From the IMG/VR virus record IMGVR_UViG_3300020084_000003, positions 220,777 to 284,776 of that record: DNA of 64,000 nt; one strand, 5' to 3'. The notes beneath the pieces are model-generated. The model had not been told where the DNA came from. It did not search any database and saw nothing but the letters and a program-made list of their open reading frames with translations. Positions 2,368 to 64,000 of the stretch are shown one piece after another; position 1 is the first letter of the stretch, and the number at the start of each line of letters is the position of its first letter. A program made the position numbers and the translations under genes.

Positions 2368-3093
2368 ATGACAACTTATTACGTATATAGAATTACCAAT
2401 AATAAACCGAATAGCATTCCAAAATACTACTACGGTTTCAGAAAATGCAACACAAGCCCATCATTAGATACAAAATATATGGGAAGTTCTAAATATCTCA
2501 AACAAGACATAAAGAACATTGGCATAGAATATTTCTCAAAGAAAATAATAAAAACATTTAATAATAAAGAATCTGCGATTGACTACGAAATCATGTTGCA
2601 TCTAAAATTTAATGTTGATAAAAACGTCATGTTTTATAACAGATGTAAAGCGAATAAATTTGGGTATAAATGCACAGGAGATGTTCTTAAAGGTAAAAGT
2701 TATACCGACATACACGGCGAAGAAAAAGCCATTAAATTAAAAGAAGAAAGATCAAGAAAAATTAAAGAAATCTCTTCTAACCGTAATTATATAGGCGATA
2801 AAAATCCAAATTATGGCAATAAATGGAGTGAAGCCATGAAAGAAAAAATGTCAGAAATGAAATCGGGTCAAAATAATCCTATATATGGCAAAATCATAAT
2901 AAATAACGGTATAAAAGAAAAAAGAATATCTAAAGATTCAAATATTCCAGAAGATTATGTTATAGGCAGAATCAGAAAAGATGTTTCTGGTATAGTAGAA
3001 GATTTTTTGAATTCTGGTCTTAGTAGAAAAGAATTTTCATTATTAAGAAACATAAACTACAACACTCTAAAGAAATATTTAAAGGGGGTTTAA
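2368..3093 (+). CDS. GIY-YIG homing endonuclease (Seg-like, NUMOD3-type repeats, C-terminal HTH)
   Basis: YYVYRITN..YYYG-R..YMGSS..E..N..FYN; NPNYG/NPIYG repeats; free-standing and opposite in strand to its neighbours. Confidence 0.85.
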   Translation: MTTYYVYRITNNKPNSIPKYYYGFRKCNTSPSLDTKYMGSSKYLKQDIKNIGIEYFSKKIIKTFNNKESAIDYEIMLHLKFNVDKNVMFYNRCKANKFGYKCTGDVLKGKSYTDIHGEEKAIKLKEERSRKIKEISSNRNYIGDKNPNYGNKWSEAMKEKMSEMKSGQNNPIYGKIIINNGIKEKRISKDSNIPEDYVIGRIRKDVSGIVEDFLNSGLSRKEFSLLRNINYNTLKKYLKGV

Positions 3094-3103
3094 ACCCCCT
3101 TTA
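3081..3103. terminator. bidirectional terminator between convergent genes
   Basis: AAAGGGGGTTT/AAACCCCCTTT inverted repeat. Confidence 0.65.
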
Positions 3104-3580
3104 AACGAATTCACTAGATTTATTTGCAACTCTATCCGCACCAAATGATGCAGCAAATGCATCTGGTTTTAATTTAGGAGAAATTCCTGTTACACCCAAA
3201 ATATATCCCGCAGCTTGTGAAGCAACGCAATTTGAACCATTCATAGGGTCTGTAGATATATCACAATGAATCTCTACATCAAATTCATCAATGAACCCTA
3301 CCAATTGTGTATATAGTTCGCAAACTTTTTGGACTTCATTCATAAGTCTAATGCTTGGTCTATTCTTCTTAACATCATAATCAGCTTCTACTGATCTGTT
3401 AGAGAATACTCTACATCCGTGTCTTCCATTAATGTGAACAACACATACGGTCGCATACTTGGCAAACCATCTTCCATCCTTCTTAAAGCGAACAGAATCA
3501 CATCCTAAGTAAATTTTTGTGTCTGGACCCACAGTTAATAGTAAGTCTACTAATTCTTCGATTTGTGATTGGGTGAACAT
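3101..3580 (-). CDS. RNase H-like YkuK family protein
   Basis: KIYLGCDS..YATVCVVH..G..E..EIHCDI..S motif pattern. Confidence 0.75.
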   Translation of the reverse strand: MFTQSQIEELVDLLLTVGPDTKIYLGCDSVRFKKDGRWFAKYATVCVVHINGRHGCRVFSNRSVEADYDVKKNRPSIRLMNEVQKVCELYTQLVGFIDEFDVEIHCDISTDPMNGSNCVASQAAGYILGVTGISPKLKPDAFAASFGADRVANKSSEFV

Positions 3581-3597: not shown

Positions 3598-4296
3598 TCA
3601 TTTTACTATCTTAAACCTTTTCTCTTTGTCAAGTTCTTTTTGAACAAGAGCCTCGATTTCCTTAGCTTGTTTTTCAATACCTTGAATTATTGCATTCCAA
3701 GTCTCTATTCTCGGAGCATCTGGATTTGCAGTGACATAGTAAACCAAATTACCATAAATTCTCAGCAAATTCTGATGGACCTTGAATAGTATGTTTTTGT
3801 CAACTTCAATTTCATAGAGGTTTTCTATTTCATCCATCAAGTTGACAAAATTTTGCTTACGCTTATTGTTGTCAGCAAAACCGTATAGGTCTAATAGAAC
3901 TAATTCTTGTCCTTCATTAGACATTGGTGCATGATTTATAGTTGTTAAAATATAATCTGCAACTTTCTCAGGCTGGATCACACCGAACGGCATGAATACC
4001 TTTTCTGGAATTGCAGAAAGATTGCCGATGACATTTTTAACAACACCATAAAAATCATATGCACTTCTAATTTCTTTATTATCTTCCTTGTCATAAACAA
4101 TGTCATGGAAAAGAATTGCAACATCCAAATTAATATCATAAGGAATTTTCAATTCTTGAGCGTAACTATACAAGTCTACAATGTGCTGCATGTTGTGATA
4201 TGTGCGGCCTGTAGGGTTCATGTATTTCATTGCTGCGTGATTCCATATACCATCTTTATTTAGTTTAGTCCAAGGTATATTGTCAATTATTTTCAT
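3598..4296 (-). CDS. HD-domain metal-dependent phosphohydrolase
   Basis: RTYHNMQHI..AILFHDIVYD..NKEIRSA. Confidence 0.75.
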   Translation of the reverse strand: MKIIDNIPWTKLNKDGIWNHAAMKYMNPTGRTYHNMQHIVDLYSYAQELKIPYDINLDVAILFHDIVYDKEDNKEIRSAYDFYGVVKNVIGNLSAIPEKVFMPFGVIQPEKVADYILTTINHAPMSNEGQELVLLDLYGFADNNKRKQNFVNLMDEIENLYEIEVDKNILFKVHQNLLRIYGNLVYYVTANPDAPRIETWNAIIQGIEKQAKEIEALVQKELDKEKRFKIVK

Positions 4297-30237: not shown

Positions 30238-32736
30238 TTAAACCTTAATATTAGTATTCAATTGATTTTCGACATTTTCAACAACAGTGATTGGAACAGA
30301 AGCAGTCCCTTTAGTTAGAACTAACGAAGAAACATCACCCTTGAAATAGCCAGCCATATGCGGACCAGCACTTCCAACATAAACTTTATCTGTTGTCATT
30401 CCGCCAGCAGTAAATGAAAGCGATCTTGTTGCTCTCTCTGTTCTATTAACTCTAAGATTCATAGTTCTAGTGGTCATATCAACAGAAGAAGTCAATATGT
30501 ATTTATTTGGACTAGCATATGCTGCACTGGTTGAATCTGATCGGTTTGCAGTGTTTGATTTTGTGGTTCTAACGCTATACATGGAATCGTTATCACTAGG
30601 TGCCAACATGGCAAAGTGGTTTGTGGTATTACCAATGAATACCAAGTTGCCGGGTAAAGAGTTTCCGATTGTTTTAATTCCACTTGTCGATACAGTAAAT
30701 CTAGTATCAGTTGAGAAATTGAAAGACTGTGTGGATACCATGAAGTCATTCACACCATCAAATCTGGCAAACCAAACACTCTCTTTATCTTTTTCTATAA
30801 CTTCATACTCACTTATTACATATTGATATTTAGTAGAAGCAGAACCAACTTCAAGCTGAACATTAGTCATATAAAACTCTGCAAAGTGAGATGTATTTGG
30901 GTCGGCTCTAATTATCAACAAATCTACAGAAGTGTTGGCCGTTTTGGTAAATGTCAAATTAAATTTCTGCCAGTAATCTCTCATCTGAATATAAGAAGGT
31001 GCGGGGTCATCTACTGTTCTTCTTAATACCAGATTTGGTTGTGTTTCTTGATAAGCACTCTTACCCATAAAACTTAAAGTATAGGTAACTCCATCAGTAA
31101 GAGTAGCAGTGTTTAATCTCACTCCGCTATAACTTGTCATTCTGTTTATATTCTGGTTTCTTCTAAAAGACATGTAAAAAACGTCATATTCGTTGTCATA
31201 CTTTATATTATTTTTATTAATATTAGGTCTATCGGAAGATGTTTCACTAATGATAGTGAAATGAGATAACACATCTTGACCCACCAACATGTTTCTTCTA
31301 GTAGAACCTACAGGCAACTTGACTGCTCTAGGCGCATAATTTTGGTCAGTCTGTGTTAAAGTCATGTTTCCATTTGAACTTTTCCAAGCTCTTATATGCT
31401 CTCCCGCCTGATAAATGTGAGTTGTAGCGGCAGTGTCAGAATACCAATAATGAGGATGGCCCCAAAAAACTGTGCTTTGAGTGTTTGCAACTGGCGCTAG
31501 TAGAGTATTTACATTTTGAACAATCATGTATTTGTAATCAGTTGATCCGCCTCTTTTCTTGTAATAAGAAAATAGCTTATCTGCCTCGGCCTTGCTTACA
31601 ATTTTATTTACAAATCCCCAACCAACTACACCACCAGTTTCAGTCACTACATCTTTAGGGCCATTTGTAAAACTGTCTGAACCCATGTTAAAGGTTGCAG
31701 TTTTAATTTCATAAGGCAAAATGAAAGACTTTTCCACGCCTGCTATAAAGAGGGTGCCAGACTGTCCAATTAGATTTGATGTGTCTGTAGTTAAAGTGTC
31801 GTCTATAGAATCAAATTTTATATATTCGTAAACAGGCATTTTAGAATCGTTTACATATATGTTATTTCTAACATCTTGATATCTTGTGGCTTCTCTTCCC
31901 ATTTCGATTTGTGGGGATGAAACATCCAATCTAGAAGCACCATCTATCACTACCATATCGCTAATGGCCCCAAATTGGATCATGGGAATTTCTATGTCAT
32001 ATAGGCAAAGGAAAGTTATGGAAACTCTAGCCCATTCTTCATCAACATAAAATATCGTAGTAGACGCATTGCTTATGCCATATTCATATATGTAATTTAC
32101 TGCCATAGTATCTAAATTTACGTTAACAATAATATCAACTTGCTCAGAACCCATTCTCATTGAGAAATATTCTTTGAATTTTCCAAATGAATTTTTTCTG
32201 TTTACATATATGGAAAAAGTAACGTATTTATTTTTTGCTGGAATAGTATGGAAACCCAAGTTTTGTGCTAGAACTACAAAGTCTGACGGATCATCATCCA
32301 CTTCTTTAGACAATATAAAAATCGGATTCCCATTCAAAGTAGAATCAGATGATTGATAAATTGTTGTTCTAGGATCGCCCCATCCAGAATTTATAAACCA
32401 AGGAAAAGCGTTTAACTTGTTTGAGTAAGGAATAATATTTCTAACACCAGTTATAGGTCTTGAACCCATAACTGGCATTCGGGATAAAGTAGATTGATAT
32501 GCATTTCTAGGATTTGTTAGAGAAATCTTACCTGTATGGCTATCCAGTATAGCACCAACAGGCTCACCATACTCACTTTTTATTGAAAAATTTGATTGAG
32601 CATATGTGTTATTCTTATCTACAGTGTAAAGAAACCCACGTTGTGCTGGATAGAAAATATCTTCTGGTGAAAATGAACCAAGGGTGTCTATCCCTTCCAA
32701 AAGATCAGCACTAAAATTATTCTCTACTTTTGGCAT
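30238..32736 (-). CDS. structural protein with carbohydrate-binding and ConA-like domains
   Basis: Repeated PQIE.G.EAT.YQ / VQLEVGSASTKYQ and FDGVNDFM motifs. Confidence 0.6.
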   Translation of the reverse strand: MPKVENNFSADLLEGIDTLGSFSPEDIFYPAQRGFLYTVDKNNTYAQSNFSIKSEYGEPVGAILDSHTGKISLTNPRNAYQSTLSRMPVMGSRPITGVRNIIPYSNKLNAFPWFINSGWGDPRTTIYQSSDSTLNGNPIFILSKEVDDDPSDFVVLAQNLGFHTIPAKNKYVTFSIYVNRKNSFGKFKEYFSMRMGSEQVDIIVNVNLDTMAVNYIYEYGISNASTTIFYVDEEWARVSITFLCLYDIEIPMIQFGAISDMVVIDGASRLDVSSPQIEMGREATRYQDVRNNIYVNDSKMPVYEYIKFDSIDDTLTTDTSNLIGQSGTLFIAGVEKSFILPYEIKTATFNMGSDSFTNGPKDVVTETGGVVGWGFVNKIVSKAEADKLFSYYKKRGGSTDYKYMIVQNVNTLLAPVANTQSTVFWGHPHYWYSDTAATTHIYQAGEHIRAWKSSNGNMTLTQTDQNYAPRAVKLPVGSTRRNMLVGQDVLSHFTIISETSSDRPNINKNNIKYDNEYDVFYMSFRRNQNINRMTSYSGVRLNTATLTDGVTYTLSFMGKSAYQETQPNLVLRRTVDDPAPSYIQMRDYWQKFNLTFTKTANTSVDLLIIRADPNTSHFAEFYMTNVQLEVGSASTKYQYVISEYEVIEKDKESVWFARFDGVNDFMVSTQSFNFSTDTRFTVSTSGIKTIGNSLPGNLVFIGNTTNHFAMLAPSDNDSMYSVRTTKSNTANRSDSTSAAYASPNKYILTSSVDMTTRTMNLRVNRTERATRSLSFTAGGMTTDKVYVGSAGPHMAGYFKGDVSSLVLTKGTASVPITVVENVENQLNTNIKV

Positions 32737-39707: not shown

Positions 39708-40325
39708 ATGAGCAATATACATTCAGAACGTTACAAAAAATTAATAAATTATTATAAAAATACTATAGTTGAAGGATATGTTGAAAAGCATCATATAATG
39801 CCTAAATGCTTAGGCGGTTCTAATGACATATCGAACTTGGTGGCATTGCCGCCACGCGCACACTATATAGCACATTATTTACTATGGAAAATGTATCCTG
39901 AAAATAAGAAGATAGCACAAGCGTTTGGTATGATGGCAGTAAACAATCCGTATCAACATAGAGTTATAAATTCTAGATTTTATGAATTGGGTAAAATTGC
40001 CAGATCAAAAGCACTTAAAGGTGAAAAGTTCAGCGAGGAAAGAAAGCAAAAGATGCGTGTTCCTAAAAAATCTACCGATGCATACAAAAAAATGAAAAAT
40101 GGTGCAGGAAATAAAGGCAAAAAATATAGACCACGAGAAAAAGAACATATAGATAATCTTAGATCAGCAGCGTCATGGTATTACGAAAAAAGAAAGAATG
40201 ATACTAAAGAAAAAATGAAGATATATAGAGAAGAATTTATAAACTCTGGGATGACTAGGAAAGAATTTGCTGAATTAAAAGATGTAAACTACGTAACTAT
40301 GAAAAGATATCTGAAAGGTTTGTAG
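39708..40325 (+). CDS. HNH homing endonuclease (Mob-like)
   Basis: EKHHIMPKCLGGSNDISNLVALPPRAHYIAH; late promoter at 39672-39679. Confidence 0.85.
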   Translation: MSNIHSERYKKLINYYKNTIVEGYVEKHHIMPKCLGGSNDISNLVALPPRAHYIAHYLLWKMYPENKKIAQAFGMMAVNNPYQHRVINSRFYELGKIARSKALKGEKFSEERKQKMRVPKKSTDAYKKMKNGAGNKGKKYRPREKEHIDNLRSAASWYYEKRKNDTKEKMKIYREEFINSGMTRKEFAELKDVNYVTMKRYLKGL

Positions 40326-42394: not shown

Positions 42395-42512
42395 TTAAGT
42401 CTCAGTGATTTACAATAGAAAATGCCGTCTACTATTCGGTCATAGTAAATCCAGCGATCATCTTCACTAGTTTTAATTAACTCGACTTTCATTTTGAAAC
42501 CTTTCTATTTAA

Positions 42513-42604
42513 TGGCGGATGGTGTGGGATTCGAACCCACGGGGCGCTTTGACACGCCCACGGCATTTCCAGTGCCGCGCCTTAGACCACTCGGCCAACC
42601 ATCC
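42513..42604 (-). tRNA. tRNA-Ser(GGA)
   Basis: Class II, CGGCA-CTGGAAA-TGCCG, G73, CCA. Confidence 0.95.
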
Positions 42605-42609
42605 GTATT

Positions 42610-42966
42610 TCATTTAAAGAGTGCTATTGCACCTTTAATCAATTTTAACGTTGCTTTTGGCGTTTCTTTAGCAACATAAATTGAGTGAAAAAATAGTTTT
42701 CTTCTATTGAAGAACTTTTTACCACTATCACTCAATCCTATACCAGCAGGCTTAGAAATAATATGACCTTTATTCATACCATAATCTAAAAAAGTGTTAA
42801 ATAAATAATGGCTATTTGATTTCACTTCTTTACCGTTTATAATTTCATCTGCCAATGGATTTTTGAAATTGTATGAAAGACACAAACAATTCCTGTGATG
42901 TTTATATATGCATTGTAATATCTTCATGTAATCATAAAATTTATAAAAATCTTGTTTACTAGACAT
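42610..42966 (-). CDS. hypothetical protein
   Basis: RBS GGGAG. Confidence 0.5.
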   Translation of the reverse strand: MSSKQDFYKFYDYMKILQCIYKHHRNCLCLSYNFKNPLADEIINGKEVKSNSHYLFNTFLDYGMNKGHIISKPAGIGLSDSGKKFFNRRKLFFHSIYVAKETPKATLKLIKGAIALFK

Positions 42967-42986
42967 TTTTTCTCCCTAAATCACTC

Positions 42987-43030
42987 TCTCCTAGCTGTTA
43001 GGACTATAAATAATCCTAGTAGATAGGAGA
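42987..43030 (+). promoter_or_regulatory. late promoter inside an RBS-sequestering hairpin
   Basis: TCTCCTA..TATAAATA(43005-43012)..TAGGAGA upstream of the GIY-YIG ATG. Confidence 0.7.
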
Positions 43031-43036
43031 CTCATC

Positions 43037-43723
43037 ATGAAATACATAGTATACCAGATAACAAACAATGTCAACCACAAAATATATATCGGAGTTCACA
43101 AAACTCACAATGAGCATGACACTTACTATGGTAGTGGAAATGCAATCAAAAAAGCAATCACAAAATATGGAAAGCACAATTTCACTAAGGATATTTTATT
43201 CACTTTTGATAATCCTAAAGAGGCTTTCGAAAAAGAAGCTGAATTGGTGACTAAAGAATTTGTCAAGTCAAATAAAAACTATAATCTAAAAATAGGTGGG
43301 TGGCATCCAAACGACATTGAAAATTCATACAAAATGATATCCGAAACCAAATCAGGAGTTGCTACGACCAAACATACTGAGGATAGCAAAGAAAAGATAC
43401 GAAAATATAGAAAATCTGTTGTCACCATAAATGATGGTAATGTTGAAAAACGCCATCCTAAAGATTTAGATATACCTAAAGGTTGGAAATTAGGTAGACT
43501 TGATAAAAATAAACAACAAAGAACCCCAAGAACTTATCTTTACATTTCAGAAGAAGGTGAAACACAAAGAATAACCAACTTAAAGAAATGGTGTGACGAA
43601 AATAATCTTAATTATTATAATATAAATGACTGCATTGACAAAGGTATTATTAGACCATCTACTAATAAACAGTCACCTACCAGAATTTTCATGATAGGCA
43701 AAGAAATTAAACGTATTGATTAA
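43037..43723 (+). CDS. GIY-YIG homing endonuclease
   Basis: YIVYQITN..KIYIGVH..YYGSG..E..YN. Confidence 0.88.
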   Translation: MKYIVYQITNNVNHKIYIGVHKTHNEHDTYYGSGNAIKKAITKYGKHNFTKDILFTFDNPKEAFEKEAELVTKEFVKSNKNYNLKIGGWHPNDIENSYKMISETKSGVATTKHTEDSKEKIRKYRKSVVTINDGNVEKRHPKDLDIPKGWKLGRLDKNKQQRTPRTYLYISEEGETQRITNLKKWCDENNLNYYNINDCIDKGIIRPSTNKQSPTRIFMIGKEIKRID

Positions 43724-43724
43724 A

Positions 43725-43863
43725 CAGGAACAACTTTTTGCTTTAACGGCGTTCTAACTTCTAAACTAACCCCCATCAATTTTATTTTTGGTTGGGGGTG
43801 TAGGATTTGCACCTACGTTTCCGGCTCCGAATGCATAGCTGATTGTTTGCTGAAATGTTCCTT
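43725..43863 (-). ncRNA. CAGCAA-handle RNA copy A with a circularly permuted tRNA
   Basis: GGAACA-TTTCAGCAA..3' tRNA half with CCA..13 nt..5' tRNA half..TGTTCC-TG. Confidence 0.75.
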
Positions 43864-44001
43864 AGAAGCCATACTAATCGGTCAGCGATTTAATATGACC
43901 TCTGAGAAACACTATAGTAGTGCCAATGCCCGAAGGCATTGGCTAGTTATGTCTCTAACGCCTTACCGTGATATACAGACCATTTCTGGTGCGCCATACG
44001 T

Positions 44002-44030
44002 ATCATACAACACGCTTGCAAGCTTGTCAA
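44002..44030 (-). promoter_or_regulatory. sigma70-type promoter
   Basis: TTGACA-17 nt-TATGAT. Confidence 0.8.
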
Positions 44031-44102
44031 TAGACAACCGAGACTGTCTTGCATTATATTTACAAGCTATGGTATTATTCATACCACAGCCTGTTCCTTA
44101 TG

Positions 44103-44501
44103 TCAAGCTTCAATCCATTCTTGAAGCCCTTCTTTGGTAAGATTTCCATGTTGGGAACCACCATACTTCTGAATCATCTTCAAAACGCGAGGAAGAATAT
44201 AGTAATAAAACTCATGTTCTCTCTCTGGTTTTCTTTTAGATTCAACTTTCTTGTAAGACTTACCTTCGATGAAGGCTCTTGCAATATAGGTTGCTCTGTT
44301 TTCATTTCTAACATCTTCTCTTCTATGAGATTTGAGATTCATGAAACTATTGTGTTTTTGGGCATACTCCGTATGGCCTTGATCCATTCCATTATCTTTT
44401 AGCCAATCTAGTTGTCTACGAAGCTTGTTCTCTTCAAAACGAATGATACGAGCTTCTTCTGAAAGATGTTTATTTTTGATTTTTAGTTCTAATGATTTCA
44501 T
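44103..44501 (-). CDS. hypothetical protein
   Basis: RBS AGGA, coherent ORF. Confidence 0.6.
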   Translation of the reverse strand: MKSLELKIKNKHLSEEARIIRFEENKLRRQLDWLKDNGMDQGHTEYAQKHNSFMNLKSHRREDVRNENRATYIARAFIEGKSYKKVESKRKPEREHEFYYYILPRVLKMIQKYGGSQHGNLTKEGLQEWIEA

Positions 44502-44650
44502 TGTTATAATCCTTTTATAATGTTACAGTTAAGCTTGTTAAAAGTAACAAAGGACTACGGTGGTTTTAAGATATCAATCTACATGTTAATTCTCCATTTT
44601 AAGATGCCAGTTTCAACGGGATTTCTGGTTTCCCTTCCCTTTCGGGATTA

Positions 44651-44726
44651 TGGAGCCTCGTGCGGGAATTGAACCCGCTTACATCCAGATTAGGGGCCGG
44701 GTGCATTACCATAATGCTAACGAAGC
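44651..44726 (-). tRNA. tRNA-Arg(CCT)-like, atypical anticodon arm
   Basis: Good acceptor, D and T arms and CCA; anticodon arm CCCGG-CCCCTAA-TCTGG is imperfect and lacks U33. Confidence 0.55.
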
Positions 44727-44732
44727 AATTAG

Positions 44733-44828
44733 TTCAGGAATATATTTGTGCCCACCATCGGGCGATTCGCAAAATGCTGCAAATATAGGAGTCGAACCTA
44801 TAAGTTTTGTTTGCTGTAATATTCCTTT
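44733..44828 (-). ncRNA. CAGCAA-handle RNA copy B (T-arm cargo)
   Basis: GGAATAT-TACAGCAA..ATAGG-TTCGACT-CCTAT..ATATTCC-TGAA. Confidence 0.7.
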
Positions 44829-48576: not shown

Positions 48577-49080
48577 TTATTCATTATAGCTAAATTTTCT
48601 AGCTGCTTTAGAAATGTTAGTATGATGGACATTGAACATTTCTCCTAATTCTCTTGAAGAATATTTTCCACCATTTTTCTTTGCATTTTTAATTATAAAC
48701 TCAACTTGTTCTTCTGTTAGCTTAGAACCAGAATTTTTTATTCGTTTTTTAGCTTTATTTAACCCCATCTTAAAAGCGTGTTGAACATTTTCTTTCCCTG
48801 TAACCCATTCTAGATTAGAAACAATATTATTATTCTTATTCCCATCTTTATGATTTACCTCTGGTAAGTCATTTAAATTATCAATGAACGCCATTGCAAC
48901 TAAACGATGTATTCTAAAACATTTACATACTCCCTCTACTCTAGTAGATAATACAGAATATCCAGACTTAACCTTACCTTGTTTTAAAATCTTATTCGTT
49001 CTTTTAGAAAATACTCGCCCCATATTGGAAATTATGAATATGGTTTCATAACCAACAACATCTTTCCAAATTTCTTTCAT
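48577..49080 (-). CDS. NUMOD4-HNH homing endonuclease
   Basis: EIWKDVVGYE..ISNMGRV; IHRLVAMAF..EVNHKDGNKNNN..NLEW. Confidence 0.9.
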   Translation of the reverse strand: MKEIWKDVVGYETIFIISNMGRVFSKRTNKILKQGKVKSGYSVLSTRVEGVCKCFRIHRLVAMAFIDNLNDLPEVNHKDGNKNNNIVSNLEWVTGKENVQHAFKMGLNKAKKRIKNSGSKLTEEQVEFIIKNAKKNGGKYSSRELGEMFNVHHTNISKAARKFSYNE

Positions 49081-51026: not shown

Positions 51027-51044
51027 ATATAAAACCTCATTTAA

Positions 51045-51173
51045 TGGTGTCTAGGGTTGGACTTGAACCAACATCTACTCTAAAAGCCTTGCTGCTTTAT
51101 AATGGAGCGATACAACCATATTGTTTCAATGGTAGGGCTTACCTTTCGCCCAATTTTACGTATACACCCAGAC
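51045..51173 (-). ncRNA. 129-nt tRNA-like RNA with an expanded core
   Basis: Acceptor GTCTGGG/CCTAGAC-A-CCA and T arm GTTGG-TTCAAGT-CCAAC flank an oversized interior. Confidence 0.6.
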
Positions 51174-52885: not shown

Positions 52886-53488
52886 TTAGAATTTGTAGAT
52901 AGCGCGAACACCAACAGTTTCTACGTCAGCAGTAAAGCCTTCGGCACCTTCAAACACGTTCTGATTAAAACCAGAATTGCCTAGATCGGTGCGGCTGTAT
53001 TTACCACCAACAACTAGATTGTCGGTAACTGCATAGTCAATACCTACGCCATATGTTGAAGAATCTTCTCCGTCAACTTTGGCATATCCTGCGGAAATGT
53101 ATGGCAGGACGCGATTGAATGCGTAACCGGCTTGTGCTTCTGCGGTATAAGTCTCAGCACCACCACTTTCAAATAGGCTTTCAGTTTTTTGATAACCTAG
53201 CTCACCACCCAGAACAAAGTTGTTCTCGAATTGATGACGATAACCAGCTACAACACCATAGGTAGTTGCGGTATCATCGCGGCTCTCAAACTCAAAATCT
53301 TCTGCAAAATCTAGATCAACAGCGGTGCGGGCGACTGTGCCACCAACATATGCACCTGACCATGAAAATTGTGGTGCGGTCACAACGGCAACTGGTTCAA
53401 CTTCAACCACCGAAGAAGTGTATCCACCAGCGACAGCGCCGGTAGCTAGAAAAGCTGAAAGACCAGCAGCAATAACAAATTTGTTCAT
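52886..53488 (-). CDS. outer-membrane beta-barrel protein (Omp25/Omp31/RopB-like)
   Basis: Signal peptide, WSGAYVGG, GYRHQF..FVLGGE, PYISAGYA, C-terminal YKF. Confidence 0.85.
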   Translation of the reverse strand: MNKFVIAAGLSAFLATGAVAGGYTSSVVEVEPVAVVTAPQFSWSGAYVGGTVARTAVDLDFAEDFEFESRDDTATTYGVVAGYRHQFENNFVLGGELGYQKTESLFESGGAETYTAEAQAGYAFNRVLPYISAGYAKVDGEDSSTYGVGIDYAVTDNLVVGGKYSRTDLGNSGFNQNVFEGAEGFTADVETVGVRAIYKF

Positions 53489-53824: not shown

Positions 53825-54367
53825 CTACTTATTCCTATTTTTATTTTTTAAAGTTTCTGAAATCTTTCTTTTGGTTTCTTCTGAAAGAATTCTTTTTGGT
53901 CTTTTCTTTGCCGAATCAGATAATTTTTGTCTATATTCATCTGATATGATCCCCCTTTTCCCTTTATTCCAAGGTTCAATTTCACCATTAGCAATTCTTC
54001 TTTTTAAGGTCTGATTTCTTCGCATCTTTGCGTTTTCATCATTCCTAATAAGTTCTTTAGTTTTCTCTGAATGTGTTTTACCTTTAAAATGTGGGCCACC
54101 CTCACCACCAACACCCAGATTGTATGTATCTTCTCTCAAACAGAAATCCTCTGTTATGAGTTTTTTCTCCATTAAGTTCATTTCTTCTTCATTATCAAAA
54201 ACAAATAAAACTTCTTTGGTGAAATTATTTTTACCATACTTCTTTATAGCATTAACAATCAATCTGCCTGAACCCATGTAAGAGTCATCGGGCTTCATGG
54301 TTTGATGTTTCCCAATATAAATTTTACCGTTAACATTGTTAGTTATTTTGTATATAGTATAGAACAA
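53825..54367 (-). CDS. GIY-YIG homing endonuclease (SegB-like; TTG/GTG start re-called)
   Basis: YTIYKITN..KIYIGKH..YMGSG; NUMOD3 motifs; the longer track ORF overlaps the upstream gene. Confidence 0.85.
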   Translation of the reverse strand: MFYTIYKITNNVNGKIYIGKHQTMKPDDSYMGSGRLIVNAIKKYGKNNFTKEVLFVFDNEEEMNLMEKKLITEDFCLREDTYNLGVGGEGGPHFKGKTHSEKTKELIRNDENAKMRRNQTLKRRIANGEIEPWNKGKRGIISDEYRQKLSDSAKKRPKRILSEETKRKISETLKNKNRNK

Positions 54368-54434
54368 TTGCACCTTCCTCTTATAGATAATATCTCTATT
54401 ATTTATAATCAGAGGAAGGTGCGTTAGACTACTT

Positions 54435-55025
54435 TCACCAATAGTCCCAGATTCGGGCTTTACCGTTTTTGTTATCTTGCCACACCATATCATCTGCGGC
54501 ATCAATGTCAAGCATGATCTTTTGGATGTTCTTTTTGTCAGAATTTCTACGGTCACGCTTGGCCGCGTTTTTAAAACCAGTGCTGCGACCTGTTTCAGAC
54601 ATTTTACCATCACGGCTCATGCTATCAAAGTAATCAGAATGTTCTTTGTAGTTTTCTTTAAAGAAGCGATCATAATCACCGTGAAATGGGACTTTACGAA
54701 TTTTACCCGGAAAATAACCGTATGGTTTTATTGGGTGGGCATAATAAAAATGAAACAGCCTGTCATTACCGTAGCTTGCCATCCATGTAGCACGATTCAT
54801 TTGATAATCGAAAAGCTGCTTATTATACTCTTTCATTTTAGCATCGTATTCGGCTTTTCTGGCTTTATATATTGCCTCATATTCGGCTTTAGGAATTTTT
54901 TCCCACACAAAACCATATTTTATGGCACGAGTAAAATCTCTATCAATCATTTTCTTGATATATTTTTCTTTGATGCCATTTTCGAACCAGTAAAGGCTCT
55001 TTTTGTTTCTATAGGTTTTACCCAA
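54435..55025 (-). CDS. hypothetical protein
   Basis: RBS AGGAGA. Confidence 0.6.
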   Translation of the reverse strand: MGKTYRNKKSLYWFENGIKEKYIKKMIDRDFTRAIKYGFVWEKIPKAEYEAIYKARKAEYDAKMKEYNKQLFDYQMNRATWMASYGNDRLFHFYYAHPIKPYGYFPGKIRKVPFHGDYDRFFKENYKEHSDYFDSMSRDGKMSETGRSTGFKNAAKRDRRNSDKKNIQKIMLDIDAADDMVWQDNKNGKARIWDYW

Positions 55026-56335: not shown

Positions 56336-56426
56336 TAAGGCCACTTATACACTTCCTAATATGACATGTCAAGTTAAAAGTTGTCTAGGAATTAAATTGT
56401 GTAAAAGCTTTGCCTATTCTTAAAAT

Positions 56427-56531
56427 TGGTATTTGGGGTAGGACTTGAACCTACTTCGCCGCAATGCGGTTTACCGAGTATGTTGCAACTCTGCATTTCC
56501 TGATACTAGCCTGAATAGCATCAGCCCAAAT
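56427..56531 (-). ncRNA. 105-nt atypical class-II tRNA-like RNA
   Basis: ATTTGGG/CCCAAAT-A-CCA, 7-bp D stem, GAGT-TGCAACAT-ACTC, variable arm, T arm. Confidence 0.6.
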
Positions 56532-58421: not shown

Positions 58422-58602
58422 ATGTGGAGACAGAAATTCATGCAGGATCAATTGACTGTGCATGACACCGATTTCCCTTGCGGGCAGGAACTCTCTTTAT
58501 CCTCTTTTTTGCCTAAATCGCTTGCGTAACGCATTGGGGATTTTCGGCTCATTATGCAGGATTTCCACCTAACTGTCAACCATCATTTAAGGTTGTCAAA
58601 AC

Positions 58603-58673
58603 TGGCTGCTGTGGTAGGAATTAAACCTACATTAAACAATATTACCGACAACGTTGACTCGGCAAACACAGCA
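58603..58673 (-). ncRNA. anticodon-less tRNA-like RNA with CCA
   Basis: TGCTGTG/CACAGCA-G-CCA, long D-like arm TGCCGA/TCGGTA, T arm GTAGG-TTTAATT-CCTAC. Confidence 0.65.
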
Positions 58674-59841: not shown

Positions 59842-60360
59842 TCATTTAGGTTTAGACCAATATCCTCTCGGTGGTTTAACTATACCCAATGAAACACATC
59901 TTTTAGAGATAGCTTTATCAGAAACATTGTATCTTTTTGCGATTTCAGTTGTAGGAATTTCCCACACTAATTTCTCAAGTTCTTCTTTACTTATCTCAAA
60001 CTTTCTTTTCTTCATAGCACTACAAGCTACCGAACAGCATTTTCTAGGGCTACTTTTTCTATACTCGAAATTTGTTCCACACAATTCACAAGTATATGTA
60101 ACAATCATTCCACCACGATCTTCAAGCATATGAAGTCTAGCATGTTCAGATTTAGTCATAACTTGCAAATTATCAATCTTGTTATTTGCTTTGTCTCTAT
60201 CTTTATGGTGAACTACCTCATCTTCATTAAGAAGTCTACCAGTTTCTTCATACACTACATAATGGTGTTCATTCACTTTACCGTATTTATCCGCGCAAGG
60301 ATGGTCAGGTATTATAGCATACATATATCCTCGGGACTTATCTAAAGTAAATTCTACCAT
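59842..60360 (-). CDS. HNH homing endonuclease with Zn ribbon (start re-called at MVEFTL)
   Basis: EHHYV..EVVHHKDRDKANNKIDNLQVMTKSEHARLH; CELC..CCS..C. Confidence 0.85.
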   Translation of the reverse strand: MVEFTLDKSRGYMYAIIPDHPCADKYGKVNEHHYVVYEETGRLLNEDEVVHHKDRDKANNKIDNLQVMTKSEHARLHMLEDRGGMIVTYTCELCGTNFEYRKSSPRKCCSVACSAMKKRKFEISKEELEKLVWEIPTTEIAKRYNVSDKAISKRCVSLGIVKPPRGYWSKPK

Positions 60361-60384
60361 ATCATTTCTCTCATTATATAAAAT

Positions 60385-60465
60385 TGGCACTCCCGACAGG
60401 ATTCGAACCTGCATCTGCCATCCAGTTACGCTATATAGTTTAGAAGACTACCACGATACGGGAGC
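60385..60465 (-). tRNA. D-armless tRNA-Arg(TCT)-like RNA
   Basis: GCTCCCG/CGGGAGT-G-CCA; anticodon arm GTAGT-CTTCTAA-ACTAT only 7 nt after the acceptor; D-loop-like AACTGGAT in the variable region. Confidence 0.65.
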
Positions 60466-61087: not shown

Positions 61088-61205
61088 CTCGGGCGGCAGG
61101 GTTCGAACCTGCGACCACCTGATTACTTTTGAAGCTTCCCGAATCGAACGGGTATTTACCTTTAGCTTCCACAGTCAGGCGCTCTACCAACTGAGCTACA
61201 CCCGA
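61088..61205 (-). tRNA. tRNA-Asn(GTT) interrupted by a 45-nt insert in the anticodon
   Basis: CCTGA-CTGT|45 nt|TAA-TCAGG; 118 nt = 73 + 45; G73; CCA not encoded. Confidence 0.8.
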
Positions 61206-61974: not shown

Positions 61975-64000
61975 TCAGGTTGTTTTTGTTACCCAATTTC
62001 TGATATTGGTTCTTTCTGCGTTGGTTGGAACTCTCTTCATTACAACCAACCCCCTTACATTTAGTTCCATGTTAGGTGCAACTCCGCTGAACATTACAGC
62101 TTTAGACGGTTTTCTAATTCTGAAATGTTGTGCCGGAATGGTTCTTTGGTTTACAACTTCACCATTGATTGCATGATATATAACATCATTTCTAATCCAA
62201 CTTTCTACTGTAACCCATACACGATTGTTAGTTGTGCCACCAGTTACATCCAAGCGATCCAACCAGTTACTTGTTGGGTTGTAGCTAATCAAAGGAGAAC
62301 TTACATGACCATTTACACCACACAATACCAAGTTGTCCCAAGAGTTGTTTCCATAGTTTAGACCAAATACAGTTGGAATAGAATTTTCTGTTCCATTTCT
62401 TATTAGCTGGACTTGATATGCAACATAGATATCGCTCTCATCTGTATAGTTGAAAGATGGTGGATTTTGATCCATTGCAGATGTTGCTCTCAAATATCCA
62501 TTTACAACTGTAGGATTATTACCTGTTTTTGTTGGACCTTGATAACCAGTGGAATCCCAACGAATGAAAGTGTCATTTGGCAAAGTTGTATCTGTTCCGC
62601 CAGATGGTGGTGTTTCAGGTGTTGGGGTCGGTGTAGGAGTTGGTGTTGGTGGTGGAGTTACAGGGTTAGAATTTCCGCTAGGTCTAACACCGTCTGTATG
62701 TCTACCATTATTCCAAGCTGAAACTGTATTCAGTGTTGGGAACCAATCACCATCTTCCGGTTTCCAGTAAACTTCATTACCTTGTGAACCGCCCATACCT
62801 GCTGGACCATATTCATTCATAATTTCCCATGAAATTCTACGGAAATAATCGGCTTGTGCCTCAGTTACGTAGTCAGGGCGATGCGGTCTACTAAGTGTTC
62901 TTTGATCTACCTGATATAGCATTGTTGTTATGAATATGGTTGTTCCGAAACATATAACATCATTTGGATGTATTTTGTCCGAACCTGTTCCATCGCCAAA
63001 TAGTGTAGTCAAAGGCATTCTAAATGGTGATGTTCCATTTATAGTATCTTGCCATACACGAAGCATGAAACGATGACCCGGTGCTATCCATACGCGCCAA
63101 TCATCCGGCAAATCTGGGAACAATTGATGCATTTTCCAAGTAATGTAGTCTGCTCTATATTTAAATCTACGCTCATAATCCATAAGCAATGGAAGTGGAT
63201 TGTTATTATTCATATCCAAAGCAGGCCATATACTCCATAGAATGTATTCAGTAGGTCTAAGGTCTTTTTTGCCATCTCTCCATGCTGCTATGGCGAATTT
63301 CATTTCGTAGAACAAGTCTTCAAAAAATACGTCATGATCCGGTGGAGCAACGCCAACATCATTTAGTCCACGCTCAGTAATAACAAGACCATCATATTGA
63401 TTCATATTATCACGTGCGTTCACATCTGCACTGTTATAGTGAAGCCAACGCCACATTGTAGCTGAACCGGGCATTGTTGACTTATAATGCGTAGCCTGTG
63501 GTTCAAATGCAGCACGTGTTCCTCCAACAGCATTAGGATGTATGCTTGTAGTCACACGCATCATACCGCCCGGCCATTCACCGCCACGATGGAAATAACT
63601 ATCCATCAAACTATGGCCTGAGTGAATATAACGCTGTCTGTCGGAAGATGCAACCCTTAACTGTCCAGTTGACGGATTTGTAGGTGGAGTTTCTGGCTCT
63701 TCTGGTTGTTCAGGTTCTTCCGGTAGTTCTGGCTCTTCTGGCAACTCTGGTTCTTCTGGTTCTTCGACTTCTTCAACCTCTGATACCACAATCGGTCCTG
63801 CAAGGCAAGAGAAAACTCTGTATGCAACTCCATTTTGTAGTCCGCTAAGGGTTGAACCGGGTTCCATATTAGTGTAGAAGGAAGCTCCATTCAAGCTATT
63901 TCCACTATTCATACTTGGGACGGCCAAGTATGAAAGTGTTTCGGATTGTGTAAAATCAACAATTACTGGTCTAGCATTTGCTGATGGTGTTATAGTTGGA
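61975..64000 (-). CDS. SGNH-like/lectin-like fibre protein, paralogue of part of ORF 15837 (5' end lies outside the window)
   Basis: Frame stays open to 64000; YIHSGHSLMDSY..PGSA.MWRW..DKIH and WDSTGYQGPTKTG match the 2220-aa protein. Confidence 0.75.
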   Translation of the reverse strand, partial: PTITPSANARPVIVDFTQSETLSYLAVPSMNSGNSLNGASFYTNMEPGSTLSGLQNGVAYRVFSCLAGPIVVSEVEEVEEPEEPELPEEPELPEEPEQPEEPETPPTNPSTGQLRVASSDRQRYIHSGHSLMDSYFHRGGEWPGGMMRVTTSIHPNAVGGTRAAFEPQATHYKSTMPGSATMWRWLHYNSADVNARDNMNQYDGLVITERGLNDVGVAPPDHDVFFEDLFYEMKFAIAAWRDGKKDLRPTEYILWSIWPALDMNNNNPLPLLMDYERRFKYRADYITWKMHQLFPDLPDDWRVWIAPGHRFMLRVWQDTINGTSPFRMPLTTLFGDGTGSDKIHPNDVICFGTTIFITTMLYQVDQRTLSRPHRPDYVTEAQADYFRRISWEIMNEYGPAGMGGSQGNEVYWKPEDGDWFPTLNTVSAWNNGRHTDGVRPSGNSNPVTPPPTPTPTPTPTPETPPSGGTDTTLPNDTFIRWDSTGYQGPTKTGNNPTVVNGYLRATSAMDQNPPSFNYTDESDIYVAYQVQLIRNGTENSIPTVFGLNYGNNSWDNLVLCGVNGHVSSPLISYNPTSNWLDRLDVTGGTTNNRVWVTVESWIRNDVIYHAINGEVVNQRTIPAQHFRIRKPSKAVMFSGVAPNMELNVRGLVVMKRVPTNAERTNIRNWVTKTT

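What the first reader, a model, noticed from the sequence alone, without database searches (positions are those of the whole stretch)
43725..43863. Circularly permuted tRNA with encoded CCA, in two-piece-tmRNA layout
Order on minus: handle, TCGGA-GCCGG-AAAC, T arm GTAGG-TGCAAAT-CCTAC, ACCCCCA-A-CCA, 13-nt linker AAAATAAAATTGA, then TGGGGGT (perfect acceptor partner), D arm GTTT/GAAC, CCG, handle. Known: alphaproteobacterial tmRNA genes are permuted the same way with a short intervening segment, and permuted tRNA genes occur in algae and archaea. There is no G3:U70 pair and no tag ORF, so this is not a tmRNA. Inference: RNase P cleavage plus 3' trimming could give a two-piece tRNA mimic with a chargeable end and no closed anticodon loop. 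A strong promoter (44002-44030) and a 130-nt structured leader with a 9-bp UUCG hairpin (43922-43943) precede it.
Basis: partly seen in the sequence, partly recalled or inferred. Interest (0 to 1): 0.82.

Follow-up and report, generated by a model that had tools for sequence, protein, structure and literature searches.

The report
Permuted tRNA-like gene with handle
A giant T4-like phage carries a complete tRNA-Arg-shaped gene written back to front and fused to a conserved "handle"; it belongs to a family of at least 31 such genes that often sit beside a Ro60-like protein gene, so it is most likely a phage version of the tRNA-mimicking Y RNAs.

Summary
On the minus strand, 43861-43727 reads: T arm, acceptor 3' strand, A73-CCA, 13-nt linker, acceptor 5' strand, D arm, closed by a 6-bp handle (GGAACA/UGUUCC).

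C27-C28-G29 lies after the D arm and G30-C31 lies upstream. Together they pair with GCCGG around the loop AUUCGGA (anticodon UCG). With the order restored and the handle removed, ARAGORN calls a 75-nt tRNA-Arg.

The gene is not a chance layout and not a tmRNA. I found 31 distinct genes of this layout in phage and metagenome contigs. All helices covary, shuffled DNA gave none, and one pattern scan of 185,000 cellular genomes gave none. All share a handle followed by C(A/C)GCAA; most of the group nearest the window also carry GCAAAAAGU. One phage holds the same module unpermuted, as a hairpin inside the anticodon stem.

In at least 12 loci the element lies beside, sometimes about 21 nt after, a DUF2828/DUF7788 gene whose predicted fold matches Ro60.

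Best reading: a YrlA-like Y RNA with a real anticodon arm and encoded CCA. No Ro60-like gene was seen in this window. The rival is a decoding tRNA that needs an unknown excision step.

The parts
44002..44030 (-). Sigma-70-like promoter TTGACA-17-TATGAT upstream of the element
   Evidence: Matches 11 of 12 positions, the best site in 42400-44800. Not conserved in relatives, which are fed by upstream tRNAs or ORFs.
43922..43943 (-). Leader hairpin, 9 bp with a UUCG loop (specific to this window)
   Evidence: Absent from L049 and L170.
43855..43912 (-). Long leader hairpin (-27 kcal/mol). Its 3' strand contains the handle 5' strand, so it competes with the handle. It may be an RNase III-type processing site or a relic of an upstream module half.
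   Evidence: The suggested roles are inference only.
43856..43861 (-). Handle 5' strand GGAACA
   Evidence: Pairs with 43727-43732. The handle is paired 6 of 6 in all 31 members and all six positions covary.
43847..43852 (-). Conserved motif CAGCAA, 3 nt after the handle
   Evidence: C(A/C)GCAA lies 1-3 nt after the handle in all 31 members. The scanner required it, but it was first seen in members found only through the T arm.
43835..43846 (-). Rest of the 5' module arm (ACAAUCAGCUAU). Its GCU can pair with AGC of the 3' module arm next to the junction.
   Evidence: A short junction-proximal helix is possible in most members with different sequences (own reading).
43821..43834 (-). Anticodon hairpin: G30 C31, loop AUUCGGA (anticodon UCG), 3' strand GCCGG (39-43)
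   Evidence: U33 and a purine at 37 are present. The same loop occurs in 7 members with 4 different acceptor stems.
43817..43820 (-). Variable region AAAC
43800..43816 (-). T arm GTAGG-TGCAAAT-CCTAC
   Evidence: The stem covaries.
43789..43799 (-). Acceptor 3' strand ACCCCCA, discriminator A73, encoded CCA
   Evidence: The discriminator is A in 27 of 31 members. CCA was a requirement of the scanner; one L224-type member outside the 31 lacks it.
43776..43788 (-). Linker of 13 nt between CCA and nucleotide +1; presumed to be removed
   Evidence: Linker length is free in the family: 4-13 nt in 19 members and 68-135 nt in 12. One holds a tRNA and others hold structured inserts.
43769..43775 (-). 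Acceptor 5' strand TGGGGGT
   Evidence: Pairs 7 of 7 with 43793-43799. Six of the 7 pairs show compensatory changes in alignment A1.
43750..43768 (-). U8 A9, D arm GTTT-AGAAGTTA-GAAC, G26
43747..43749 (-). C27 C28 G29: the first three nucleotides of the anticodon-stem 5' strand, pairing with G43 G42 C41
   Evidence: In the family this piece supplies 0-5 nucleotides. All nucleotides it supplies are paired in the stem types that reach 5 of 5 pairs; three members reach 4 of 5.
43733..43746 (-). 3' module arm UUAAAGCAAAAAGU, containing the conserved GCAAAAAGU
   Evidence: GCAAAAA(A)GU lies directly before the handle in most of the group nearest the window.
43727..43732 (-). Handle 3' strand TGTTCC
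43037..43723 (+). GIY-YIG (SegE-like) homing endonuclease gene, convergent, ending 4 nt from the handle. A neighbour that may have shaped the locus; not part of the RNA.
   Evidence: Pfam PF19835, E = 1.7e-6.

Best explanation
The element is a circularly permuted gene for an RNA that folds as a complete tRNA-Arg(UCG) cloverleaf. A conserved extra module branches from the 5' strand of its anticodon stem. That module consists of a short junction helix, an internal loop carrying CAGCAA and GCAAAAAGU, and a 6-bp handle formed by the two ends of the transcript. I think it works as a phage Y RNA of the YrlA type. In that reading, the handle module is the docking site for a phage Ro60-like protein (DUF2828/DUF7788), and the tRNA body is the effector part that tRNA-binding enzymes recognise. 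RNase P would cut before U1 and exonucleases would trim the linker back to the encoded CCA. The result would be a two-piece RNA held together by the acceptor stem, the split anticodon stem and the handle. Shown here: the architecture, its conservation and covariation in 31 genes, the adjacency to the protein gene in other phages, and the Ro60-like predicted fold of that protein. Inferred: binding, processing at the linker, any aminoacylation, and the biological role (tRNA surveillance or repair, or a counter to tRNA-targeting host defences).
For: Anatomy and cloverleaf. Family: a scanner found 31 distinct members in 2.0 Mb of fetched DNA and none in 5 shuffles or in reversed sequence. After re-permutation, 29 of the 31 give a full-length ARAGORN tRNA call. 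Covariation: 97.6% of cells are paired, 14 of 24 pairs show compensatory changes, 0 of 500 shuffles reach that, and slid controls pair about 40%; nine complementary handle variants occur among the 31 members and every handle position covaries. The module is the same whatever the anticodon (Arg, Pro, Phe, Ile, Met, Glu, Tyr and others), as expected for a common binding partner. The same module occurs unpermuted as a closed hairpin in the anticodon stem (L137/L231). It also occurs alone. Partner: a 480-500-aa DUF2828+DUF7788/VWA gene lies on the same strand next to the elements in at least 12 loci. The gap is about 21 nt in L165 and L186 and 24 nt in L124, and the gene is flanked on both sides in L185. 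Its AlphaFold model matches Ro60/Rsr/TROVE structures over the full length (E 2.5e-7 to 8e-6, TM 0.47-0.57). The Arg-anticodon type, which is the window's type, is the one directly downstream of that gene in five loci, and within 1 kb in two more. YrlA RNAs are published as Ro60-bound mimics that 'resemble circularly permuted tRNAs', and M. smegmatis YrlA is cut by RNase P and receives CCA (PMC4201824; bioRxiv 10.1101/312249). A decoding role is unlikely: CGA plus CGG are 11 of 441 Arg codons in 14 large window ORFs, and relatives carry ordinary tRNAs with the same anticodons.
Against: No Ro60-like gene was found in the 64-kb window or in the roughly 19.5 kb to its left. The remaining 200 kb or so of the contig was not seen. 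Only about 40% of the elements have the gene within the fetched flank. The YrlA signature GNCGAAN0-1G is absent and Rfam YrlA gives no hit. The canonical anticodon loop, the retained Arg identity (C35, G36) across divergent members, and the encoded A73-CCA fit a chargeable or even decoding tRNA better than a pure mimic. In the window, a very stable leader hairpin competes for the handle 5' strand. Binding and processing are untested.
Confidence: 0.5

Rival explanations
1. It is a true permuted tRNA-Arg(UCG) gene. The handle module would be a new kind of small intron, about 45-60 nt, in the anticodon stem. After RNase P and 3' trimming open the acceptor end, both module arms would be removed and the nick in the anticodon stem sealed, for example by a phage RNA ligase. 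The product would be a decoding tRNA.
For: The re-permuted sequence is a perfect cloverleaf with U33, a purine at 37 and A73-CCA. The anticodon stem is always completed to 5 bp although the insertion point moves between 27/28 and 31/32, which is intron-like behaviour. An unpermuted, intron-like form exists. No unsplit tRNA with this anticodon arm exists in the viral collection. The window's ordinary tRNAs cover ACG, CCU and UCU but not UCG. Jumbo phages commonly carry Rnl1, Rnl2 or RtcB ligases (PMC7824862).
Against: The intron would be far too small for a group I intron, and no ribozyme family matches. I could not draw a bulge-helix-bulge motif. No ligase or splicing endonuclease appeared in the roughly 49 window ORFs scanned. 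CGA and CGG codons are almost unused by this phage. Relatives have ordinary tRNAs with the same anticodons. The strong sequence conservation of the module and its adjacency to a Ro60-like gene are not expected for a spacer that is simply discarded.
Confidence: 0.25
2. It is an inert relic. Tandem intron-bearing tRNA genes would have been rearranged by recombination or homing-endonuclease activity, leaving a 3' half followed by a 5' half that no longer does anything.
For: A GIY-YIG endonuclease gene ends 4 nt from the handle. The upstream GUGUUUC...GGAACAU hairpin looks like a decayed module half. Truncated 'solo' modules and two members without a tRNA call show that copies do decay. The family behaves like a mobile cassette in tRNA arrays.
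Against: In the window copy every helix is perfect (6, 5, 7, 4 and 5 bp) and both module motifs are intact. It also has its own near-consensus promoter. The same permuted order recurs in 31 distinct genes with compensatory changes, which requires selection on the folded RNA.
Confidence: 0.08
3. It is a two-piece (permuted) tmRNA or a reduced form of one, charged with alanine and used for ribosome rescue.
For: It has the same gene order as permuted tmRNA genes and an encoded CCA. Some huge phages carry tmRNAs, including the relatives L109 and L123.
Against: The acceptor has G3-C70, and G:U at 3:70 is not conserved in the family. There is no tag frame. ARAGORN and Rfam tmRNA and tmRNA_permuted give no hit. 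A full D arm and anticodon arm are present, unlike tmRNA. L109 and L123 have a normal one-piece tmRNA in addition to their element.
Confidence: 0.02

Closest known systems
YrlA-type bacterial Y RNAs (Rfam RF02553), partners of Ro60/Rsr
   Same: The order is 5' stem strand, short conserved motif, stem-loop, T arm, acceptor-like stem, D arm, 3' stem strand, so these are circularly permuted tRNA mimics. They are encoded beside a Ro60-type gene on the same strand. M. smegmatis YrlA has a 7-bp acceptor stem, is cut by RNase P and gains CCA, giving two pieces (PMC4201824; 10.1101/312249).
   Different: This family has a complete anticodon stem-loop with ordinary anticodons and an encoded A73-CCA. 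The docking module branches from the anticodon stem instead of replacing it. The motif is C(A/C)GCAA, not GNCGAAN0-1G, and there is no Rfam hit. The partner protein is DUF2828/DUF7788, Ro60-like by predicted fold only. Members sit in tRNA arrays of large phages, several per genome, and unpermuted forms exist.
Circularly permuted tRNA genes of Cyanidioschyzon merolae and other algae, and of Thermofilum (archaea)
   Same: The 3' half lies upstream of the 5' half with a short linker, and re-permutation gives a canonical tRNA. The likely origin is tandem duplication of an interrupted gene. (The comparison rests on my own knowledge of those systems.)
   Different: Those genes are matured by the bulge-helix-bulge splicing endonuclease and a ligase through a circular intermediate, in eukaryotes and archaea. 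Here the host is bacterial (T4-like phage), I could not draw a bulge-helix-bulge motif, the junction lies inside the anticodon stem, and the junction sequence is a conserved module.
Two-piece tmRNA (alpha-proteobacteria, some cyanobacteria and beta-proteobacteria)
   Same: Permuted gene order, with the CCA-bearing piece first, and processing at an intervening segment.
   Different: No G3:U70, no tag frame and no pseudoknots. A full D arm and anticodon arm are present. No ARAGORN or Rfam match.
Phage T4 stable RNAs C and D (species 1 and 2) in the tRNA cluster
   Same: Small non-tRNA genes of unknown function inside the tRNA array of a T4-type phage, next to a GIY-YIG homing endonuclease gene (segB). 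One has a T arm and one ends in CCA.
   Different: I saw no permuted acceptor arrangement on inspection, and there is no handle or CAGCAA module.

Membership tests
YrlA / bacterial Y RNA | tRNA-like domain in the order T arm, acceptor-like stem, D arm, closed by pairing of the RNA's 5' and 3' parts | tested here: met
YrlA / bacterial Y RNA | GNCGAAN0-1G motif near the 5' end (the proposed Ro60 contact) | tested here: not met
   The equivalent position holds C(A/C)GCAA in all members.
YrlA / bacterial Y RNA | Scores above the Rfam RF02553 gathering threshold | tested here: not met
   No hit on the element even at E<=10, in the window and in L049, L109 and L102. The YrlA hits in those loci fall on tRNA-tRNA junctions.
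YrlA / bacterial Y RNA | Encoded next to a Ro60/Rsr orthologue | tested here: inconclusive
   Across the family, at least 12 loci have a Ro60-like (by predicted fold) DUF2828/DUF7788 gene adjacent. For this window, none was found in 64 kb plus about 19.5 kb, and the rest of the contig was not seen.
YrlA / bacterial Y RNA | Bound by Ro60 in vivo | not testable with these tools
   Needs immunoprecipitation or a gel-shift assay.
Circularly permuted tRNA gene | The 3' half precedes the 5' half on one strand, and re-permutation gives a canonical tRNA | tested here: met
   ARAGORN calls tRNA-Arg(UCG), 75 nt, and the minimum-free-energy fold is a cloverleaf. The same holds for 29 of 31 members. The junctions were chosen to complete the stem, so the test is not fully independent.
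Circularly permuted tRNA gene | Bulge-helix-bulge motif at the junction of the termini, cut by the splicing endonuclease | tested here: not met
   Both junctions lie on the same strand of the anticodon stem at a three-way junction. I could not draw a helix of 4 bp flanked by 3-nt bulges (own reading).
Circularly permuted tRNA gene | Matures to a contiguous decoding tRNA | not testable with these tools
   Needs RNA sequencing. Codon usage argues against demand for it.
Two-piece tmRNA | G3:U70 alanine identity pair | tested here: not met
   The window has G3-C70. In the family, position 3 is G-C in 26 of 31 and G-U in 1.
Two-piece tmRNA | Tag reading frame and pseudoknots; detected by ARAGORN or Rfam tmRNA_permuted | tested here: not met
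Group I intron in a tRNA gene | Catalytic core of about 200 nt or more with P3-P8; Rfam Intron_gpI | tested here: not met
   The module is about 45-60 nt and gives no Rfam hit.
Ro60 / TROVE protein (the partner, in related loci) | Alpha-solenoid ring plus C-terminal vWA domain; Pfam TROVE | tested here: inconclusive
   Pfam gives DUF2828 + DUF7788/VWA, not TROVE. Sequence search of the PDB gives nothing. The predicted fold matches Ro60, Rsr and TROVE structures as the top five hits over the full length (model pLDDT 73).

The most novel reading that the evidence does not exclude
Bacterial viruses have their own system of interrupted and circularly permuted tRNA genes. The conserved handle module would be a new class of small tRNA intron inside the anticodon stem. 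It would be recognised by a Ro60-like ring protein and removed by trimming plus nick sealing with a phage RNA ligase, so that maturation of a set of tRNAs is under phage control.
Probability: 0.15. Interest if true: 0.95.

Novelty: new variant of a known kind. Interest (0 to 1): 0.78.

Why it matters
As far as I know, tRNA-shaped Y RNAs are described only for bacterial Ro60 operons (with phage candidates reported by homology), and permuted tRNA genes only for a few algae and archaea. This family joins the two ideas in large T4-like phages. These RNAs are real tRNA cloverleaves with ordinary anticodons and an encoded CCA, written permuted or interrupted, and carrying one conserved docking module. 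They frequently lie beside an abundant protein family (about 8,000 or more relatives) that is unannotated in the sources searched here and has a Ro60-like predicted fold.

If the link holds, it gives DUF2828/DUF7788 a function and a ligand. It also provides a natural set of two-piece tRNAs for testing what Ro60-type rings do with tRNA-like partners. It would add a new player to the phage-host conflict over tRNAs.

Standard tRNA finders miss all of these genes, so phage tRNA repertoires are being miscounted.

Tried and rejected
- **tmRNA.** ARAGORN and Rfam give no hit, the acceptor has G3-C70, and there is no tag frame.
- **Remnant of two tandem tRNA genes.** Rejected because the same order recurs with compensatory changes in 31 genes.
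- **Ribozyme or group I intron in the module.** No Rfam hit in the window, L049, L109, L102, L122 or L137 at E<=5-10.
- **GenBank phages.** No DNA match for the region. The upstream 132-aa protein has only hypothetical relatives.
- **Unsplit homologues of the Arg(UCG) anticodon arm.** The viral collection gave four chance hits in coding DNA.
- **Members in 185,579 bacterial and archaeal genomes.** One pattern scan gave 16 chance hits and none with the architecture.
- **A Ro60-like gene in the window.** The VWA protein at 1405-2319 shares only the MIDAS motif. ORFs 3598-4296, 3101-3580, 61975-63927 and 30238-32736 are unrelated. tblastn of four family proteins against the window was negative.
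- **Walking the source contig leftwards.** About 19.5 kb showed replication and nucleotide-metabolism genes only. I stopped because each step adds only about 10 kb.
- **RNA ligase or splicing endonuclease.** None among about 49 window ORFs scanned with Pfam.
- **T4 stable RNAs C and D as relatives.** They have no shared module.
- **Literature.** Searches for permuted tRNA genes in phages, phage tRNA introns and DUF2828 returned nothing relevant.
- **Operators' note on proteins read through a stop.** It did not come into play.

Full report
**1. What is in the sequence**

The window is the last 64 kb of a 284,776-bp phage contig, IMGVR_UViG_3300020084_000003 = Ga0194110_10000009. The phage is T4-like. 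It encodes gp59, gp32, UvsX, a DnaB-type helicase, thymidine kinase, collagen-repeat giant proteins, and many GIY-YIG and HNH homing endonucleases. Coordinates 33-62 kb hold an array of 28 or more tRNA genes on the minus strand.

- handle 5' strand GGAACA
- T arm
- ACCCCCA-A-CCA
- a 13-nt linker
- UGGGGGU
- a D arm
- CCG
- handle 3' strand UGUUCC

The promoter (11 of 12 positions) and the UUCG hairpin are also real. ARAGORN and Rfam call nothing there, even at E<=10. A purpose-written scan for this layout found this one clear case in the window; a second hit at the end of tRNA-His, with a 117-nt linker, I took as chance. Shuffles gave 0-1 weak hits.

**2.

The anticodon arm is complete but split between the two pieces. 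After the D arm come G26 and C27-C28-G29. Upstream, G30-C31 precede the loop AUUCGGA and the strand GCCGG. Together they form a 5-bp stem with a canonical 7-nt loop (U33, G37, anticodon UCG).

I put the 5' piece first and left out the sequence between G29 and G30. ARAGORN then calls a full-length 75-nt tRNA-Arg(UCG), and RNAfold returns a perfect cloverleaf at -28.2 kcal/mol. The proposed precursor fold lies within 2 kcal/mol of the minimum free energy of the 135-nt core. That minimum-energy fold itself contains the handle, T arm, acceptor stem and D arm.

**3. It is a family**

A scan of viral contigs with the T-arm 17-mer returned mostly ordinary phage tRNAs. It also returned L049, from a 283-kb phage, with the same permuted layout and compensatory changes in the acceptor stem and handle. 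L109 and L102 had a different handle. Further pattern scans of viral and metagenome contigs added many more.

An automatic parser required a 6/6 handle followed by C(A/C)GCAA, a T arm, CCA and a 7/7 acceptor partner. Its results:
- It finds 31 distinct genes in 2.0 Mb of fetched DNA, and none in five shuffles or in reversed sequence.
- Five of the 31 have ordinary UUCGAAU-type T loops. They were picked up only because they lie in the same loci, so the family is not an artefact of the search pattern.
- After in-silico re-permutation, 29 of 31 give full-length tRNA calls: Arg-UCG in 10, plus Arg-ACG, Phe, Pro, Ile, Met, Glu, Tyr, Val, Leu and Asp. I chose the junctions to complete the stem, so this test is supportive rather than independent.
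- Independent support comes from the nucleotides supplied by the 3'-side piece directly after N26 (CG, CCG, ACG, GGU, GU, CGU, CGA). Each set matches a different 3' strand.
- On a seven-sequence alignment, 97.6% of cells pair and 14 of 24 pairs show changes on both sides. No shuffle in 500 reaches this, and sliding the partners drops pairing to about 40%.
- Nine complementary handle variants occur among the 31 members, and every handle position covaries.
- The discriminator is A in 27 of 31.

Linkers fall into two classes, 4-13 nt in 19 genes and 68-135 nt in 12. The L123 linker is a tRNA gene, the L102 linker is tRNA-like, and the others are structured inserts closed by a long stem. A loop that tolerates this much variation while A73-CCA is kept argues that the linker is cut out.

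No member turned up in one pattern scan of 185,579 bacterial and archaeal genomes. No unsplit tRNA with the commonest anticodon arm exists in the viral collection.

**4. The conserved module**

Whatever the anticodon, the sequence between the two anticodon-stem segments is the same kind of thing. It runs: 5' strand of the handle, 1-3 nt, C(A/C)GCAA, about 10-15 nt ending near a GC, then the tRNA. After the tRNA come 2-6 nt, then GCAAAAA(A)GU (in most of the group nearest the window), then the 3' strand of the handle.

The point where this module leaves the anticodon stem moves from 27/28 to 31/32. In the 283-kb phage, which also holds two permuted copies, the same module occurs unpermuted. There it is a closed hairpin inside the anticodon stem of two adjacent tRNA-like genes (L137, L231, L176). 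'Solo' modules with little or no tRNA also exist. The permuted and unpermuted genes are therefore two openings of one circle. Tandem duplication with loss of the outer halves is the obvious origin. In the window, a decayed-looking handle partner upstream and a homing endonuclease gene 4 nt downstream fit that history.

**5. The partner protein**

Clustering ORFs from the element-bearing loci showed one family of 480-500 aa in 12 loci. Pfam assigns it DUF2828 plus DUF7788/VWA. It lies on the same strand as the elements:

| Locus | Position of the element(s) relative to the gene (same strand) |
|---|---|
| L165, L186 | about 21 nt downstream |
| L124 | 24 nt downstream |
| L185 | flanked on both sides (35 nt downstream, about 100 nt upstream) |
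| L180, L203, L188 | 0.16-0.9 kb downstream |
| L147 | about 0.14 kb upstream |
| L102 | about 1.3 kb upstream |
| L125, L176, L224 | within about 0.6 kb upstream (elements identified by hand) |

The family is very large (about 8,000 relatives scored) and unannotated in the sources searched. Sequence search of the PDB finds nothing. An AlphaFold model (pLDDT 73) has Ro60-type structures as its five best Foldseek hits, aligned over the full length at E 2.5e-7 to 8e-6 and TM 0.47-0.57: a TROVE-domain crystal structure (9kop), D. radiodurans Rsr and Xenopus Ro60.

The 283-kb phage encodes this protein (P0124). It lies about 300 nt downstream of the unpermuted elements, in a neighbourhood with a CCA-adding enzyme and a TilS-like protein. 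Five of the six loci where the gap is no more than about 340 nt carry the Arg-UCG type, which is the window's type.

**6. Comparison with what is known**

Ro60 proteins bind Y RNAs. Bacterial YrlA RNAs are encoded beside rsr and contain a T arm, an acceptor-like stem-loop and a D arm in exactly this order, closed by the RNA's ends. They are described as resembling circularly permuted tRNAs. M. smegmatis YrlA, which has a 7-bp acceptor stem, is cut by RNase P and receives CCA, giving two Ro60-bound pieces (PMC4201824; bioRxiv 10.1101/312249). A review of jumbo phages notes ROT/TROVE proteins in some of them and a tRNA-like partner in cells (PMC7824862).

The present family works like that but fails the membership tests. 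It lacks the GNCGAAN0-1G motif and gives no Rfam YrlA hit. It adds features YrlA lacks: a true anticodon stem-loop, encoded A73-CCA, a docking module that branches from the anticodon stem, a DUF2828-type partner, several copies per genome, and unpermuted forms.

Permuted tRNA genes of algae and archaea share the gene order but rely on a bulge-helix-bulge motif, which I could not draw here. Literature searches found no report of permuted tRNA genes or such interrupted tRNA genes in phages. The library is incomplete, so this is absence of evidence only.

**7. Function**

I favour a Y-RNA-like role (confidence 0.5). The handle module would dock the Ro60-like protein. The tRNA body, opened at its acceptor end by RNase P and 3' trimming, would be the effector.

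Three observations argue against a simple decoding role:
- CGA plus CGG make up 11 of 441 arginine codons in 14 large ORFs of the window.
- Relatives hold ordinary tRNAs with the same anticodons.
- No splicing enzyme is in view.

Three observations argue against my reading:
- No Ro60-like gene lies in the window or in the roughly 19.5 kb beside it.
- More than half of the elements are not next to one.
- The kept Arg identity and the CCA suggest that the RNA is charged.

The rival, a new phage system of interrupted and permuted tRNA genes matured by trimming and ligation, keeps about 0.25. An inert relic gets about 0.08 and a tmRNA about 0.02. The remaining probability, about 0.15, is left for explanations I have not thought of.

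**8. Verdict**

The finding opens onto a conserved RNA family, apparently undescribed in the literature searched, and a candidate ligand for a very large protein family of unknown function. I file it as a new variant of a known kind (YrlA-like permuted tRNA mimics).

Noticed in passing
window 61088-61205 (-): A 118-nt tRNA (Rfam 59 bits) that ARAGORN misses. It has a hairpin insert of about 45 nt in the anticodon loop, and the insert contains its own UUCGAUU T-like hairpin. This is a different kind of interruption from the handle module.
   Followed up: partly
window ~51040-51172 (-): A tRNA-like gene of about 135 nt (GTCTGGG ... CCTAGAC-A-CCA, with a good T arm) carrying large inserts, one of which contains GCAGCAAGG. 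No tool calls it.
   Followed up: no
window ~56425-56531 (-) and ~58580-58655 (-): Two more uncalled tRNA-like genes with matching acceptor strands and CCA. The first (ATTTGGG...CCCAAAT-A-CCA) follows tRNA-Met directly.
   Followed up: no
window 43037-43723 (+), 2368-3093 (+), 53825-54613 (-), 39708-40325 (+), 48577-49080 (-), 59842-60414 (-): Six homing endonuclease genes (three GIY-YIG/SegE-like and three HNH), five of them inside the tRNA array and one (2368-3093) outside it. The arrangement recalls segB in the T4 tRNA cluster.
   Followed up: partly
L149, L183, L193, L165, L180, L185 and others (linkers of family members): The 68-135-nt linkers are themselves structured RNAs: multi-branch folds closed by a 10-12-bp stem, most ending in UUGAU before nucleotide +1. 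L149, L183 and L193 share one conserved version. Their nature is unknown.
   Followed up: partly
L224-L227; L122 (minus strand, index 2638); L231 13684-13745: 'Solo' handle modules (handle, C(A/C)GCAA, partner motif, handle) enclosing no tRNA or only an anticodon-like hairpin. They could be decayed copies or a YrlB-like second RNA type.
   Followed up: partly
L109 7441-7791, L123 4350-4717; CTA-anticodon tRNAs in L003, L109, L123, L124: Related huge phages carry a one-piece tmRNA and one or two amber-suppressor (CTA) tRNAs, which hints at stop-codon recoding in this group.
   Followed up: no
L049 2564-2661 (-): A 98-nt stretch matches only the two ends of the Rfam tmRNA model (31.5 bits, below threshold). 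It may be a bare tRNA-like domain.
   Followed up: no
L231 5578-6822, 7990-8610, 18964-19437: In the 283-kb phage, the Ro60-like gene sits in a neighbourhood with a CCA-adding enzyme, a TilS-like PP-loop protein, a Macro domain protein and R2K ATP-grasp proteins.
   Followed up: no
window element and many loci: T loops reading UGCAAAU (G instead of U at position 55) go together with D loops that have AG instead of GG. This holds in these elements and in many ordinary phage tRNAs, and may be a covarying elbow contact.
   Followed up: no
window 52886-53488 (-): A phage-encoded outer-membrane beta-barrel protein (Pfam OMP_b-brl, E = 4e-15), which points to a Gram-negative host.
   Followed up: no
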